The notes beneath the pieces are model-generated. The model did no database searches and was not told the origin of the DNA. It saw nothing but the letters and a program-made list of their open reading frames with translations. From Octopus bimaculoides (Eukaryota): DNA of 42,330 bases. The DNA lies in NCBI RefSeq assembly GCF_001194135.2, contig NC_069005.1, positions 20,313,406 to 20,355,735 of the forward strand, read 5' to 3'. Below are positions 11,901 through 38,016 of the stretch, in pieces. Positions within the stretch are counted from its first letter, which is position 1; each line of letters opens with the position of its first letter. Made by a program: the position numbers and the translations under genes.

Positions 11901-12679
11901 ATGCAAATCTACTGGAATATCTTAGTCTTTTTTGCTACAAGCACTGTTTCTGTGCTTGGCGATATTAAGCAAGATGTGGTCTACAAGTTCAGTTCTCTCA
12001 CCTTCGAATCATTACAGGGAGTTTACAGTTCGTCAGAAAATGTTGTTAAGGACATTCAAGTCTACAATGATACAGTCTACGTAAGCATACCACGGCTCAC
12101 TCCAAATGTTCCAGTAACGTTGGCTACTGTCGAGAAGAAAAACGATAAAGTTGTGTTTAAACCTTTCCCAACCTTGAAAGATCAAAAATTAGGTGACTGC
12201 AATGCTTTGCAATCGGTCGGCGGAATACGTGTTGTTCGTAAAACGAATCTACTCTACGTAGCAGATAATAAATACTTAGGGTGTAGTGCCAAACTAATTA
12301 TTTTCGATTTAGTCAAACGATCAATAAAAACGAGATATGAGTTTCCCAATTCGGTTATCGGTGAAATAAAAAATTCCACACAATTTGAGGACATTGTCGT
12401 CGATGGTAAAGGTAATGTGTACATAGCAAATGCTGGAACACCTGGTTCAATCATAGTCTACATGAGTAAAATGAAAAAAAGCTTCGTTTTCCATGATCGA
12501 ATATTGGAGGTCGTCAATCCTGTCACTTTCAAATTTGGCAACGATTCGTACATTATGAATCAAAGTATAAGTGAAATGACGCTTTCACCCGAAGATGATT
12601 ACCTGTTCTTCGTTACTCATTATAAGAAGACTGTCCAAGTCCCGACAAAATCTTTTGAGGATATTTCAACCCGGATGAG
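11901..12679 (+). CDS. yellow-like: Yellow/MRJP-family protein, coding exon 1 (signal peptide and N-terminal part of the six-bladed beta-propeller)
   Basis: Signal peptide MQIYWNILVFFATSTVSVLG|D. Family motifs YVSIPRL..VPVTLA, PFP, GDCNALQSV, LYVAD..GCSAKLIIFDL..YEFP, DIVVD..VYIAN..GSIIVY, MTLSP..LFF. The ORF stop overlaps a strong donor AG|GTAGGT at 12679/12680. Confidence 0.92.
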
Positions 12680-13810
12680 GTAGGTGGAACACATTCATTT
12701 GAAACTTTTATTGTATGTGGCCGTGACGCCTGTTAAGGCTGCGATTCGGCAGTCGTTAGAGCAAAGCATTTTATCAGACACTCTTCCTCATAAATCATCT
12801 TCCTAATACTTCTCCCTCGTTCTACCTTTATTCCACGCGCGCTGTATTTTCCCATCGCATCCTCGTGCACACTTCTGCACAAAATATTTTCCCTGTTGAA
12901 TTTCGTCCCGACAACATAATCTTCTTAAAACCCCTTCCTCTCTCTGTACTTGTGTTCACTCACTGCATTGCCCTCCACTCCACTTTCATTCTCCTTTCGC
13001 AGTCTCGCGAACGTACCCAAATACTCATCATATCAAATCCTTGGTTTCACTTCCCTTAATTACACTTCACTGTAACGTGAGTGGAAGTTCCGTTACCTCT
13101 TCACGATCACTCTCTTCTTTCTATCTTCTTCCTCACTCTCCCTTCTCTACTATCTCTTTTTCTATCTTCTTCTATATCCCCCATCTCTCCAACTGAGGTT
13201 GCCATGTATCACCTCTACTCCAACGCACTAATTTCTGTCCATCTAATCACACTCTTAACATCTCATCCTCTGGCACAAAGTCATCTCCTTCAATGAGGAC
13301 CTTGTCTTACAATTTACTTGGTGATCTCAATGCTGCTAGTGCCTCATGAAGGGCACCCATTACACTCTGTAAGTGGTTGGCATTAGGAAGAGCAGTCACA
13401 GAAAACATGCCAAAGCAGACATTGAAAAATTTGTGTAGTCTTCTGACTTACCAGCTCAGGCCAAATTGTCCAAATCATGGTTGTTGTAGAAATGAGTTGC
13501 GAGTCACTGGTGCCAAGCTGTATTGGACTNNNNNNNNNNNNNNNNNNNNNNNNNNNNNNNNNNNNNNNNNNNNNNNNNNNNNNNNNNNNNNNNNNNNNNN
13601 NNNNNNNNNNNNNNNNNNNNNNNNNNNNNNNNNNNNNNNNNNNNNNNNNNNNNNNNNNNNNNNNNNNNNNNNNNNNNNNNNNNNNNNNNNNNNNNNNNNN
13701 NNNNNNNNNNNNNNNNNNNNNNNNNNNNNNNNNNNNNNNNNNNNNNNNNNNNNNNNNNNNNNNNNNNNNNNNNNNNNNNNNNNNNNNNNNNNNNNNNNNN
13801 NNNNNNNNNN

Positions 13811-14110
13811 AGCCTCGGGCCGACTAAAGCCTTGTGAGTGGATTTGGTAGACGGAAACTGAAGGAAGCCCGTTGAATATATCTCTATATATGTATGTATC
13901 TGTGTGTCTGGGTTTGTCCCCCCACCATTGCTTGACAACCGATGTTGGCGTGTTTATGTCCCCATAACTTAGCGGTTTGGCAAAAGAGACCAATAGAATA
14001 AGTACTAGGCCTACAAAGAATAAGTCCTCGGGTCGATTTCTTTGACTAAAAGCAATGCTCCAGCATGGCTGCAGTCAAGTGACTGAAACAAGTAAAAGAA
14101 TAAAAGAATA
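13811..14110 (+). mobile_element. SINE (head hidden in gap)
   Basis: Colinear with 19845-20145. Confidence 0.9.
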
Positions 14111-14846
14111 CAATATATATATATTTCCAAAAATGAATTTAAAGGGATATATTATACTGGTGGTTATTGTGTTTCGTCTTAATTTGGTTTCAGATGCCGG
14201 CTAACCACAATGGTCCTTTTGTGATACCTGAGCTAACAATAAGTTGCTAGCCTCTTGTTTGGTAAATCTGAGTGTCCTGTTCAGGATTGCATTATTTCTG
14301 TAGAGTAAGTAATAGTATTGATAATGATAAGGAGAATGGAGATTTTTCACATCCATAATTTTATCAGTCATTTACAGCATCCTTTACTGGACCTACATGC
14401 ATTTCAACTGCATTGACTGCACATTGTTGGATATGCAACATTGTCAGTACAGTTTCATCAGGGCCCTTACTCTCTGCCATTTCGTGAAACTGAAAGAATA
14501 AAAAAATAAATAAATAAATAAATAAAAAAATATTAGAATAACAAACTAAGGATATTCCCTTTGAAATGAGAGCAATGGTAAACTTGTAGTAGTAATGACA
14601 AATCTACATAAACAGTCAATCCAACCATGACCTATTTTTAGGACTATGTCTCTCGCTTCACCAACCACATTTAGTAGAGGTGAACCTCAGTCAAGATTCC
14701 TACAACTATTAATAGCAGCACCCATACCTCCGAAAAAACACTTCATTCAGTTTGCTGATTATTATTTCGTTTTTGAACACAACATGTGATTCGTCTTATA
14801 CCCAGTTTTTCACTTAGTACTTTTGTACTATGAAATATGTATGTGT

Positions 14847-15170
14847 GAAGGGGCATGGCTCAATGGTTAGAGTATTGGGCTTGCAATCGTGAGTTTGATC
14901 CCTGGACTGGGTTCTGTGTTGTGTTCTTGAGCAAGACACTTTATTTCACGTTGCTCCATTTCACTCAGCTGTAAAAATGAATTGCGATGTCACTGGTGCC
15001 AAGCTGTATTGATCTTTGACTTTACCTTGGATAATATCGGTGTCATCGAGAGAGGAGGCTGGTATGCATGGGCAACTGGTGATCTTCCATAAACAACCTT
15101 GCCTGGACTTGTGCCTCGAAGGTTAATTTTCTAGGTGCAATCTCATGGTCAATCATGACCGAAGGGGGTC
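14847..15170 (+). mobile_element. tRNA-derived SINE, second family
   Basis: A box TGGCTCAATGGTTAG, B box GTTTGATCCC, core TGTGTTCTTGAGCAAGACACTT. Head is related to the 18430-18660 copy. Confidence 0.8.
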
Positions 15171-36351: not shown

Positions 36352-36353
36352 TA

Positions 36354-36700
36354 TATCTTTTGACAAGATCACTACCTAATTACGACACCAGTGTCTGTTC
36401 TGGCACTGTTTTTTCTCTATATTGCTAGCAGGGAGATGAGTTGCTGCTATCTCTAGTGGTCAAGTGTCCATCACTGATGAGAAGGTTGAAATCATGTGAT
36501 CTGGTGGTCTTGGTGTTGGAGATGGCAGGGATTTATCTGTCTGCTAGTGATATAAACAAGAGTGCATTTTTCACCAAAAGCCAATATGAGAGTTTCTCTC
36601 ATGATATCTACCACTGTATAGTTTGTTCTAACAGAATATCTATATTTAAGCGGGCATATATTATCTCTCAGTATTAATACTGCCTCTGTCACTTATGTAT
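36354..36700 (+). mobile_element. Second direct copy of the HHR-bearing repeat
   Basis: Contains the HHR at 36468-36507 and repeats 34593-34785. Confidence 0.8.
36468..36507 (+). ncRNA. Type I hammerhead ribozyme motif, stem II partly deleted (probably inactive)
   Basis: CCATCA-CTGATGA-GAAGGTT-GAAA-TCATGTGA-TC|TGGTGG: stem I, intact core boxes, near-palindromic stem III, AUC triplet. Confidence 0.75.
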
Positions 36701-37571
36701 ATTTTTCATGACATGGGAAAGGAAGACCAGATGACATGCTGCGGCTAAACTGGAAAGGAAACTGCAAGGCTGCAGAGCTGAAACAAAGCAGGGATCCAAC
36801 TAGAGAAAAGCAGAAAAAAACAGCCCAGAGTTGAAAACAGTGGAAAAAAGTTGTTTATGGCCTCTGCTTCATAGGGAAGGAAAGCTTTAAGTAATATGCA
36901 TGAAAGGAAAGAGCTAAGCCTGTGACATCCATCTGAGGAGTTTTTTTCTTCTTTTTTTTTGTCAGTGGTTTAGAGGAAGAAGAGCCTCCATGACTGGAAG
37001 TGGATGGATTTCTCTTCAAACCAGAGACCTGGCCCAAATACTTGCAACAAAATGAATTCTGTTAAAGGCATCTAAGTGCCAGGTGCTGCTGTTAATCTGA
37101 ACACATTATTACAATACAACAAAAACCCTGGTAGTTGCTAGCATGAGACTCTTATTTATTTTCTGTTCATGTTTCATTAAATCAACATTATTTACCTCAT
37201 GCTACTAACAAATACTTCATTGCTATCTCATATTCCTTCAGACATGCTTATTAGTTATTTCCCCTTGCTCATTACCTCTTCAATGTCAGTTCATGTTATT
37301 AATTCTACATAATTTTCTCTTGTTGCTAATTGTTTCTCTGTGTATTGTAAATCAATCCCTCATTATCTCATGTTGCTAATTGTTTTCACTTTGTTATTTT
37401 ATGTTGATAATTACTTCCCAAATATTTCACATTGCCAATTACTTCCCTTATTTCTAATACATCATAATTTTTTCCATTGTCAATTCATGTTGCTAAGTTT
37501 TTGCTTATCTCATCCCATGATGCTAATTTACTACTTCCTCATTACCTTCTCTCCTTCTTTTCTCATTATAG

Positions 37572-38016
37572 CTTGAAGAAAATTCGTTCTATTGGAACGA
37601 AATTGGCGAAAGGATTTGGCATGTTGATGGGGAGGAAGTACATGTATCTGACAGGTGTCGAGGATAAAGCGCTGTATATCTGGGACCGCAATGCTGACCT
37701 GGAGAAGCAGAAAATTATTGTCCAATCTGCTGACCGTGTTATCATGGACACACAGAAAAAACTGAAAGTTAGCCCTGAGCTCTCCTTGCACCCAGGAAAG
37801 ATGTCTTTTGACAATCATGGGAACTTGTGGATCATAACTACAGATTACCAGTTGTACTTCAGAAATTCCTCTGATGGTGAAGGCTATGAGACAAAAATTG
37901 TGAAACTAAAAGTTGATGACTCAAGGGAAAAGCGAACTACTTCGACTGCAGCTTTGGACCGGAAGCTCCTTATATCATTAATAATTGCCACGGTCATGTT
38001 GTGCATTGTTTTGTAG
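37572..38016 (+). CDS. yellow-like: Yellow/MRJP-family protein, terminal coding exon with hydrophobic C-terminal anchor signal
   Basis: The open frame begins exactly at a strong acceptor in the phase required by exon 1. It encodes GFGMLMG..MYLTGVEDKALYIWD..PGKMSFDNHGNLWIIT..KIVKLKV (yellow C-terminal blades), then REKR-TTSTAALDRK-LLISLIIATVMLCIVL*. Confidence 0.88.

What the first reader, a model, noticed from the sequence alone, without database searches (positions are those of the whole stretch)
11901..38016. Intact Yellow/MRJP gene in an apparently cephalopod genome, hidden across a 24.9-kb intron
Seen: two ORFs 25 kb apart join at canonical splice sites in the right phase into a 407-aa protein with yellow motifs, the conserved Cys pair (GDCNALQSV, GCSAKL) and five N-X-S/T sequons. 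There are no frameshifts, unlike every TE around it. Established: Yellow/MRJP genes are typical of insects and occur patchily in bacteria, fungi and a few other animals. Inference: the single coding intron and patchy distribution fit a horizontal or retroposed origin followed by intron gain. I cannot confirm whether this gene is already annotated.
Basis: partly seen in the sequence, partly recalled or inferred. Interest (0 to 1): 0.8.

Follow-up and report, generated by a model that had tools for sequence, protein, structure and literature searches.

The report
Octopus yellow gene, already annotated
The two distant reading frames do splice into one intact 407-residue Yellow/MRJP-family gene of Octopus bimaculoides, but this exact gene model is already in RefSeq, the gene was described in a 2019 paper, and its relatives across molluscs argue against horizontal transfer into cephalopods.

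Summary
Exon 1 (11901-12679) and exon 2 (37572-38016) join at GT/AG sites in phase 2 to give a 407-aa protein. It scores 55.8 bits against Pfam MRJP (cut-off 19.8), and each exon alone also hits the profile. The model is a beta-propeller whose ten best PDB matches are all Yellow/MRJP structures.

All five gaps lie inside the 24,892-bp intron. The window is colinear with a gap-free O. vulgaris locus across every gap. O. vulgaris and Argonauta have the same two-exon CDS, with the intron at the same site and phase. dN/dS is 0.15-0.30.

It is not new. The window is identical to O. bimaculoides CM046625.1. The joined protein is exactly XP_052832718.1 (LOC106872886). PMC6678240 (2019) already rebuilt the full-length transcript and reported expression in skin and suckers.

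The horizontal-transfer reading is not supported. The nearest non-octopod relatives are brachiopod, bivalve, gastropod and chiton yellow-like proteins.

Intron gain from an intronless ancestor remains plausible. The Haliotis and Potamilus genes are intronless, and the Lingula and ant introns lie elsewhere. The paper's table lists this gene as having 0 introns, which is a small error.

The parts
11886..11895 (+). Probable 3' splice site (polypyrimidine tract plus CAG) of a 5'-UTR intron, 5 nt upstream of the start codon. The non-coding first exon was not located.
   Evidence: ATATTTTCAG|TACAC-ATG is conserved in O. vulgaris, a third octopod (L006) and Argonauta (TCTCTTACAG|TCCAC-ATG). This is inference only; no transcript data were used.
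11901..12679 (+). Coding exon 1 (779 nt, codons 1-259 plus 2 nt of codon 260). It covers the signal-peptide-like N-terminus (aa 1-20), the conserved Cys100 and Cys128, and roughly the first four propeller blades.
   Evidence: ORF. Donor GAG|GTAGGT. MRJP hit of exon 1 alone is 31 bits, profile positions 31-149. The exon is the same length in O. vulgaris.
12680..37571 (+). Phase-2 intron of 24,892 bp. It holds five assembly gaps, interspersed repeats and TE debris.
   Evidence: GT...AG boundaries. The intron is colinear with the gap-free 18,559-bp O. vulgaris intron. The extra length comes from window-specific insertions at about 25887-28053, 29073-31893 and 33234-36175. The site and phase are the same in Argonauta, where the intron is 12,461 bp.
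17454..17852 (-). Reverse-transcriptase fragment (retroelement debris) inside the intron.
   Evidence: Pfam RVT_1, 45 bits, E=1.4e-11.
35169..35396 (-). Tc1/mariner-type DDE transposase fragment inside a window-specific intronic insertion.
   Evidence: Pfam DDE_3, 28.4 bits, just below the 28.6 cut-off. The insertion is absent from O. vulgaris.
37572..38016 (+). Coding exon 2 (445 nt including stop TAG at 38014-38016; last nt of codon 260, then codons 261-407). It covers the last propeller blades and the C-terminal tail.
   Evidence: Acceptor TTATAG|. MRJP hit of exon 2 alone is 20.1 bits, profile positions 197-284. dN/dS against O. vulgaris is 0.24.
37966..38013 (+). C-terminal 16-residue hydrophobic tail (LLISLIIATVMLCIVL). 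It is preceded by small residues (TTSTAA) and has no residues after it. It is a probable GPI-attachment signal or membrane anchor.
   Evidence: Sequence. It is conserved in O. vulgaris and Argonauta, and similar tails occur in several lophotrochozoan homologues. AF2 predicts a helix at 385-406. No GPI predictor was available, so this is inference.

Best explanation
This is the single Yellow/MRJP-family gene (called DCE/yellow in the literature) of Octopus bimaculoides, locus LOC106872886. It has two coding exons separated by a 24.9-kb phase-2 intron full of repeats and assembly gaps.

Shown: the spliced CDS encodes a 407-aa protein identical to RefSeq XP_052832718.1. The gene, the intron site and the phase are conserved in O. 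vulgaris/O. sinensis and in Argonauta. Both exons are under purifying selection. The protein is predicted to fold as a closed, six-bladed-type beta-propeller most similar to MRJP1, Aedes dopachrome conversion enzyme and the sand-fly protein LJM11. Exon 1 alone, the old 260-aa model, cannot close the propeller.

Inferred: the protein is secreted (hydrophobic N-terminus), N-glycosylated (five sequons) and held on the outer cell surface by a C-terminal GPI anchor or hydrophobic tail. By analogy with insect Yellow-f/f2 and Aedes DCE, and given the published high expression in skin and suckers, its most likely job is to bind or convert a catechol/indole small molecule at the central pocket, for example dopachrome to DHI in melanin or sclerotisation chemistry. 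I put about 0.35 on true DCE activity, because the published pocket comparison shows low conservation. A non-enzymatic ligand-binding role is about as likely.

Evolution: the gene was inherited vertically within a family that is widespread in Lophotrochozoa. The coding intron was most likely gained in the cephalopod lineage from an intronless ancestral gene.
For: - Splice geometry and frame.
- Pfam MRJP 55.8 bits against a 19.8 cut-off, spanning the junction. Each exon separately hits complementary profile parts.
- PDB sequence hit to MRJP1, E=3e-10, with both Cys aligned.
- AF2 model with pLDDT 77 and pTM 0.80. The Foldseek top 10 are all family members (7asd, 9w1k, 5yyl, 2qe8, 3q6k; TM 0.62-0.74), followed by a drop to generic propellers.
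- Orthologues: O. vulgaris 86%, Argonauta 57%, both 407 aa. They have an identical two-exon structure and phase in gap-free assemblies.
- Colinearity across all gaps.
- dN/dS of 0.30, 0.17 and 0.15.
- The exact protein is XP_052832718.1, LOC106872886. The window is 100% identical to GCA_001194135.2 CM046625.1, and the annotated CDS span equals 11901-38016.
- PMC6678240 reports a full-length O. bimaculoides DCE/yellow transcript rebuilt from RNA-seq. Its His-333 and Tyr-352 numbering matches this 407-aa protein. It reports more than 100 TPM in skin, suckers and visceral mass.
- The nearest relatives are lophotrochozoan animals. The Haliotis and Potamilus genes are intronless. The Lingula and ant introns lie elsewhere.
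Against: - I did not inspect transcript reads directly. Splice support rests on the RefSeq model, the paper's residue numbering and comparative conservation.
- The biochemical function is untested. The 2019 paper reports that only two of seven LJM11 pocket positions have a counterpart in the octopus protein, which weakens the DCE or amine-binding analogy.
- The signal peptide and GPI anchor are read from the sequence only.
- The octopod clade sits on a long branch. Its position relative to other mollusc and insect yellows is unresolved in my NJ tree and in the paper, so vertical inheritance is the parsimonious reading, not a proven one.
Confidence: 0.9

Rival explanations
1. The gene entered cephalopods by recent horizontal transfer from bacteria, fungi or insects and then acquired an intron.
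For: The family has a patchy distribution across life, and bacterial-origin hypotheses for metazoan yellow exist in the literature (cited in PMC6678240). The octopod proteins are only 21-28% identical to any non-cephalopod homologue. The gene has just one coding intron.
Against: Every named protein among the nearest non-octopod hits is an animal, mostly lophotrochozoan: Lingula, Sinanodonta, Arion, Haliotis, Pinctada, Aplysia, Lymnaea and the chiton Liolophura. A motif-based scan of 185,579 prokaryotic genomes found no relative, although its sensitivity is limited. The gene sits in a colinear chromosomal context in three octopod genera. PMC6678240 finds the family in most lophotrochozoan phyla.
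Confidence: 0.04
2. Only exon 1 is the real gene (the old 260-aa model). The downstream ORF is an unrelated or decayed fragment brought close by scaffolding across gaps.
For: The 260-aa model exists in UniRef/EukProt. Five gaps lie between the exons. The paper's table lists the gene as having 0 introns.
Against: Exon 2 alone hits the C-terminal part of the MRJP profile. It is conserved with dN/dS 0.24. It lies in the same order and orientation in gap-free O. vulgaris and Argonauta loci. It is needed to complete the propeller. RefSeq joins the two exons exactly as proposed. The paper's His-333 and Tyr-352 lie in exon 2.
Confidence: 0.02
3. The gene is intact but is not a dopachrome-converting enzyme. 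It is a surface-tethered ligand-binding or structural propeller with a cephalopod-specific role, for example in sucker or skin epithelium.
For: The published comparison shows low conservation of pocket residues (PMC6678240, Table 2). Many family members, such as MRJP1 and LJM11, are non-enzymatic (PDB names). The octopod clade is on a long branch. The protein has a C-terminal membrane-anchor-like tail. Octopus also keeps a separate DCT gene, which is expressed in the retina.
Against: There is no direct evidence either way. Skin expression fits pigment chemistry. The fold is as close to Aedes DCE as to MRJP1.
Confidence: 0.45

Closest known systems
Octopus bimaculoides LOC106872886, XP_052832718.1 (RefSeq, assembly GCA_001194135.2)
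   Same: It is identical. The 407-aa joined protein is this exact sequence, and the annotated CDS span equals window 11901-38016.
   Different: Nothing differs. RefSeq names it only 'uncharacterized protein'.
Lophotrochozoan DCE/yellow genes as described in PMC6678240 (Genes 2019;10:495)
   Same: Same family, and the same O. bimaculoides gene. The paper rebuilt the full-length transcript from RNA-seq, modelled the protein and reported expression in skin and suckers.
   Different: The paper's Supplementary File 2 lists the octopus gene as having 0 introns and no flanking genes. The locus actually has a conserved 24.9-kb phase-2 coding intron. The paper does not discuss the C-terminal anchor-like tail.
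Insect Yellow / dopachrome conversion enzyme (Aedes DCE 9w1k), honeybee MRJP1 (5yyl, 7asd), sand-fly LJM11 (3q6k)
   Same: Same Pfam family PF03022. The beta-propeller fold matches at TM about 0.7. The Cys pair is conserved. All are secreted glycoproteins in architecture.
   Different: Identity is only about 18-27%. The octopus protein has a shorter loop between the two Cys. Few LJM11 pocket residues are kept (paper). The ant yellow intron lies about 27 residues upstream of the octopod one.
Intronless mollusc yellow-like genes (Haliotis asinina XP_067671579.1; Potamilus streckersoni CHS0354_043030)
   Same: They are among the nearest named relatives. They have a single MRJP domain and a similar length.
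   Different: Each is a single uninterrupted coding exon. Identity is about 23-25%.

Membership tests
Yellow/MRJP (Pfam PF03022) | Sequence scores above the Pfam gathering threshold for MRJP | tested here: met
   55.8 bits against a 19.8 cut-off, aa 127-378, profile positions 31-283 of 288. Exon 1 alone scores 31 bits and exon 2 alone 20.1 bits.
Yellow/MRJP (Pfam PF03022) | Six-bladed beta-propeller fold closest to solved family members | tested here: met
   AF2 model with pLDDT 77.1, pTM 0.80 and 28 strands. The ten best PDB matches are all MRJP1, Aedes DCE, Ava_4197 or LJM11 (TM 0.62-0.74). The next matches are generic propellers at TM 0.4-0.5. The MSA was shallow (9 sequences).
Yellow/MRJP (Pfam PF03022) | Conserved cysteine pair in the N-terminal half | tested here: met
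   C100 and C128 are invariant in the 10-sequence alignment A3. Both align with Cys residues of MRJP1. Disulfide formation itself was not tested.
Yellow/MRJP (Pfam PF03022) | N-terminal secretion signal | not testable with these tools
   The sequence MQIYWNILVFFATSTVSVLG|D looks like a signal peptide. No signal-peptide predictor was available.
Dopachrome conversion enzyme (functional subclass of Yellow) | Catalyses dopachrome to DHI, with conserved pocket residues | not testable with these tools
   An enzymatic assay is needed. PMC6678240 Table 2 reports that only two of seven LJM11 pocket positions have an octopus counterpart, His-333 and Tyr-352.
Recently horizontally acquired gene | Nearest relatives lie outside the recipient's wider clade, and the gene is absent from sister lineages | tested here: not met
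   The nearest non-octopod hits are brachiopod, bivalve, gastropod and chiton proteins. No prokaryotic relative was found by the motif scan. Placement in the NJ tree is unresolved but among animals.
Intronless ancestral gene with later intron gain | The closest relatives lack introns, and the intron site is not shared with intron-bearing relatives | tested here: met
   The Haliotis and Potamilus CDS are uninterrupted. Lingula introns map to window residues of about 57, 76, 123 and 167. The ant intron maps to about residue 233, not 260. Only four outgroup genes were sampled.
Retrogene | Retroposition hallmarks: a multi-exon parent gene, a poly(A) remnant and target-site duplications | not tested
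   No parent gene is known, and at this age the hallmarks would have been erased.

The most novel reading that the evidence does not exclude
The phase-2 intron at codon 260 is a gain specific to the cephalopod lineage, in a gene that is intronless in other molluscs. This would correct the published '0 introns' entry. An unidentified relative (Logan run ERR12370323) groups with octopods at 100% bootstrap. It ends its first exon at a GG|GTAAGA donor in the same phase, within about 4 residues of the octopod site, which suggests the gain predates Octopoda. The encoded propeller would be a GPI-tethered skin and sucker surface protein whose pocket has diverged from insect DCE, giving it a cephalopod-specific function.
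Probability: 0.45. Interest if true: 0.3.

Novelty: already known. Interest (0 to 1): 0.12.

Why it matters
It matters little beyond housekeeping. The work confirms that the current RefSeq model is right and that the older 260-aa model, still present in UniRef/EukProt, is truncated. It corrects a published table entry (0 introns). It also shows that a 25-kb gap-ridden intron does not compromise the gene model.

The open question is biological: what a surface-tethered Yellow-family propeller does in octopus skin and suckers, alongside a separate DCT gene expressed in the retina. That question was already raised in 2019.

Tried and rejected
- The second word-indexed homologue search with a 10-sequence profile returned only 14 proteins. 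It did not even return members of the query alignment. Names for distant hits came from cluster look-ups instead.
- The motif scan of prokaryotic genomes matched 33 stretches, none confirmed by tblastn. This is a weak negative because only one peptide pattern was used.
- tblastx of the window against Argonauta was mostly low-complexity noise. The only substantial protein-level matches were the two exons and one repeat family.
- Rfam and tRNA scans of the window found nothing, so the 430-bp repeat could not be classed as a tRNA-derived SINE.
- Literature searches for the run accessions and the LOC/XP identifiers found nothing. Searches for a paper on the Aedes DCE structure found no source for catalytic residues.
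- I considered a shared intron with ant yellow-like, because its exon 1 is also exactly 779 nt and phase 2. I rejected it: the site aligns about 27 residues upstream.
- I ran no further search on P0010. The answer would only date the intron gain.
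Full report
**1. Observation**

The window holds an ATG-initiated ORF at 11901..12683 (260 aa) and an ORF ending at 38016. Reading the DNA gives these features:
- Exon 1 ends ...ATGAG|GTAGGT at 12679/12680.
- Exon 2 starts after a long polypyrimidine tract and TTATAG| at 37572.
- 779 + 445 nt = 1224 nt = 407 codons plus TAG, with a phase-2 junction inside codon 260.
- The motifs GDCNALQSV and GCSAKL are present, as are five N-X-S/T sequons (N56, N158, N214, N220, N358).

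All five listed gaps fall inside the intron (12680-37571, 24,892 bp), and neither exon contains an N. Three results address continuity and order.

(a) blastn shows the window is colinear with the gap-free O. vulgaris chromosome locus L001. This holds from window 175 to 41394 and across each gap. The two gaps at 26290-26685 and 27291-27489 sit inside a window-specific insertion (about 25887-28053). Two further window-specific insertions (about 29073-31893 and 33234-36175) explain why this intron is 24.9 kb against 18.6 kb.

(b) tblastn of the 407-aa protein against L001 and L002 finds only two coding blocks. Alignment with intronless relatives shows no missing segment at the junction.

(c) In both gap-free orthologous loci the annotated 407-aa proteins are reproduced only by one GT..AG intron at the same site and phase. 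O. vulgaris has exons of 779 + 445 nt and an intron of 18,559 bp. Argonauta hians has exons of 767 + 457 nt and an intron of 12,461 bp.

**3. What it is**

- *Family.* Pfam MRJP (PF03022) scores 55.8 bits against a gathering score of 19.8, over aa 127-378, so it runs through the junction. Exon 1 alone matches profile positions 31-149 (31 bits). Exon 2 alone matches positions 197-284 (20.1 bits). The two distant ORFs are therefore complementary halves of one domain.
- *Solved relatives.* phmmer against PDB sequences finds honeybee MRJP1 (E=3e-10), with both cysteines aligned, then sand-fly LJM11 and Aedes dopachrome conversion enzyme.
- *Fold.* An AlphaFold2 model from a shallow 9-sequence alignment has pLDDT 77 and pTM 0.80. 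It is an all-beta propeller with a C-terminal helix at 385-406. Its ten best Foldseek matches in the PDB are all MRJP/Yellow-family structures (7asd, 9w1k, 5yyl, 2qe8, 3q6k; TM 0.62-0.74). Scores then drop to generic WD40 and other propellers.
- *Consequence for the old model.* The junction at residue 260 lies between blades, so the old 260-aa product could not close the propeller.

**4. Identity of the locus**

- The exact 407-aa sequence is in public databases as XP_052832718.1, 'uncharacterized protein LOC106872886 [Octopus bimaculoides]'. It shares a cluster with the truncated 260-aa model from UniRef/EukProt.
- Fetching that gene's locus returns DNA identical to the window over 40,430 bases. 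The gene span is 26,116 bp, which equals 11901-38016. The window is therefore GCA_001194135.2 CM046625.1, starting near 20,313,406.
- Orthologues are O. vulgaris CAI9740646.1 and O. sinensis XP_029650946.1 (86%), and Argonauta hians (57%). A fourth octopod from a Logan assembly (P0004, 80%) has the same exon-1 end.

**5. Literature**

PMC6678240 (Genes 2019;10:495) traced DCE/yellow genes through metazoans. For this gene it reports that:
- the family is present in bivalves, gastropods, cephalopods, brachiopods, rotifers and copepods;
- expression exceeds 100 TPM in skin, suckers and visceral mass.

Their Table 2 cites His-333 and Tyr-352 of the octopus protein. The joined 407-aa protein has H at 333 and Y at 352, both in exon 2. 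This is indirect transcript support for the splice. Their Supplementary File 2 lists the octopus gene as having 0 introns, which the locus contradicts.

**6. Selection**

Nei-Gojobori dN/dS is 0.30 against O. vulgaris (exon 1 0.33, exon 2 0.24). It is 0.17 and 0.15 in the comparisons with Argonauta, where dS is saturated. The gene is intact and constrained in every octopod examined.

**7. Origin**

- *Nearest relatives.* An exhaustive profile search of 1.84 billion representatives gave 481 hits at E<=1e-3 and 19 at E<=1e-30. All the named proteins among the best non-octopod hits are animals. They are Lingula anatina (three tandem copies fused in one model), Sinanodonta, Arion ('Bee-milk protein'), Haliotis ('protein yellow-like'), Pinctada, Aplysia ('protein yellow'), Lymnaea, the chiton Liolophura, the sponge Oscarella and the beetle Nicrophorus.
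- *Prokaryotes.* A motif-based scan of prokaryotic genomes confirmed no relative. This is a weak negative.
- *Tree.* A rough NJ tree puts the octopods on a long branch. They form an unresolved three-way split with the other lophotrochozoan/sponge sequences and the insects. This matches the paper's statement that the cephalopod position is unresolved.
- *Verdict on HGT.* HGT into cephalopods is not supported. Vertical descent with fast divergence is the parsimonious reading.

**8. The intron**

- Haliotis asinina (1191 nt) and Potamilus streckersoni (1368 nt) encode their proteins in one uninterrupted exon. [quoted passage not shown]
- Lingula copies have introns equivalent to window residues of about 57, 76, 123 and 167, and none near 260.
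- The ant Pseudomyrmex yellow-like gene has one intron. By coincidence it also follows 779 nt in phase 2, but it aligns about 27 residues upstream.
- A partial protein from unidentified Logan runs (P0010) groups with octopods at 100% bootstrap. Its ORF ends at ...CTGGG|GTAAGA, a phase-2 donor within about 4 residues of the octopod site. The intron may therefore predate Octopoda.
- Intron gain in the cephalopod lineage from an intronless ancestor is thus plausible. A retroposed origin cannot be tested.

**9. How it most likely works**

*Shown.* The predicted fold is a closed propeller of the Yellow/MRJP family, and the cysteine pair is conserved.

*Inferred from sequence.* The protein has an N-terminal signal peptide (aa 1-20). 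It has five sequons, three of them conserved to Argonauta. It ends in a 16-residue hydrophobic tail preceded by small residues (TTSTAA), with nothing after it. That is the classic layout of a GPI-attachment signal. Similar tails occur in several lophotrochozoan homologues and in an ant yellow-like protein.

*Proposal.* I propose a glycosylated ectoprotein tethered to the surface of skin and sucker cells, which binds or converts a catechol/indole compound in its central pocket. Dopachrome conversion is the textbook activity of insect Yellow-f/f2 and Aedes DCE. I give it about 0.35 here, because the published pocket comparison shows poor conservation. A non-enzymatic binding role is a live rival.

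**10. Verdict**

The HGT interpretation fails. The residual points are small: a wrong '0 introns' entry in the literature, a probable 5'-UTR intron, and a probable GPI anchor.

Noticed in passing
window 11886-11895; L001 about 9986-9995; L002 about 9986-9995; L006: A polypyrimidine tract plus CAG lies exactly 5 nt upstream of the start codon. It is conserved in four octopods including Argonauta. It looks like the acceptor of a 5'-UTR intron, so the gene probably has a non-coding first exon upstream that I did not locate.
   Followed up: partly
window 8573-8723(-), 11008-11136(-), 13811-14113(+), 19022-19205(+), 19391-19620(+), 19735-20166(+), 33404-33760(-): A roughly 430-bp interspersed repeat family has at least 7 copies or fragments in the window. 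It is also present several times in the O. vulgaris locus and is detectable in Argonauta. It has no tRNA or Rfam match. It may be a SINE-like element, but it remains unclassified.
   Followed up: partly
window 17454-17852(-), 5842-6141(+), about 35169-35396(-): TE debris is present: two reverse-transcriptase (RVT_1) fragments and a Tc1/mariner-type DDE_3 fragment. The DDE_3 fragment lies inside an intronic insertion absent from O. vulgaris.
   Followed up: partly
window about 25887-28053, 29073-31893, 33234-36175: Three insertions are specific to the O. bimaculoides lineage relative to O. vulgaris. They account for most of the 6.3-kb difference in intron length. Two of the five intronic assembly gaps sit inside the first insertion.
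   Followed up: yes
PMC6678240 Supplementary File 2, compared with window 12680-37571: The published table lists the O. bimaculoides DCE/yellow gene as having 0 introns, apparently because it was based on the truncated exon-1 model. The locus has a conserved 24.9-kb coding intron.
   Followed up: yes
L003 1027-1860 (Logan ERR12370323) and L004: An exon-1-only ORF (P0010, 277 aa) comes from an unidentified organism. It clusters with the octopod proteins and ends at a phase-2 GG|GTAAGA donor near the octopod intron site. It is probably a non-octopod cephalopod orthologue.
   Followed up: partly
L010 2001-3601 (Pseudomyrmex gracilis yellow-like): Its first coding exon is also exactly 779 nt and phase 2, like the octopus gene. 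The intron maps about 27 residues upstream in the alignment, so this is a coincidence and not a shared intron.
   Followed up: yes
L002 1-6027(-) and 28856-33685(-): In Argonauta the yellow gene is flanked by a mitochondrial-type RNA polymerase gene (RPOL_N/RNA_pol) and a glycolipid-transfer-protein gene. No called neighbours lie within 10 kb in O. vulgaris or O. bimaculoides.
   Followed up: no
C-termini of P0008, P0011, P0007, P0158, P0013, P0005: Many lophotrochozoan yellow-like proteins, and one ant yellow-like protein, end in a hydrophobic tail like the octopus protein. This suggests that membrane or GPI tethering is widespread in this branch of the family. The 2019 paper does not discuss it.
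   Followed up: no
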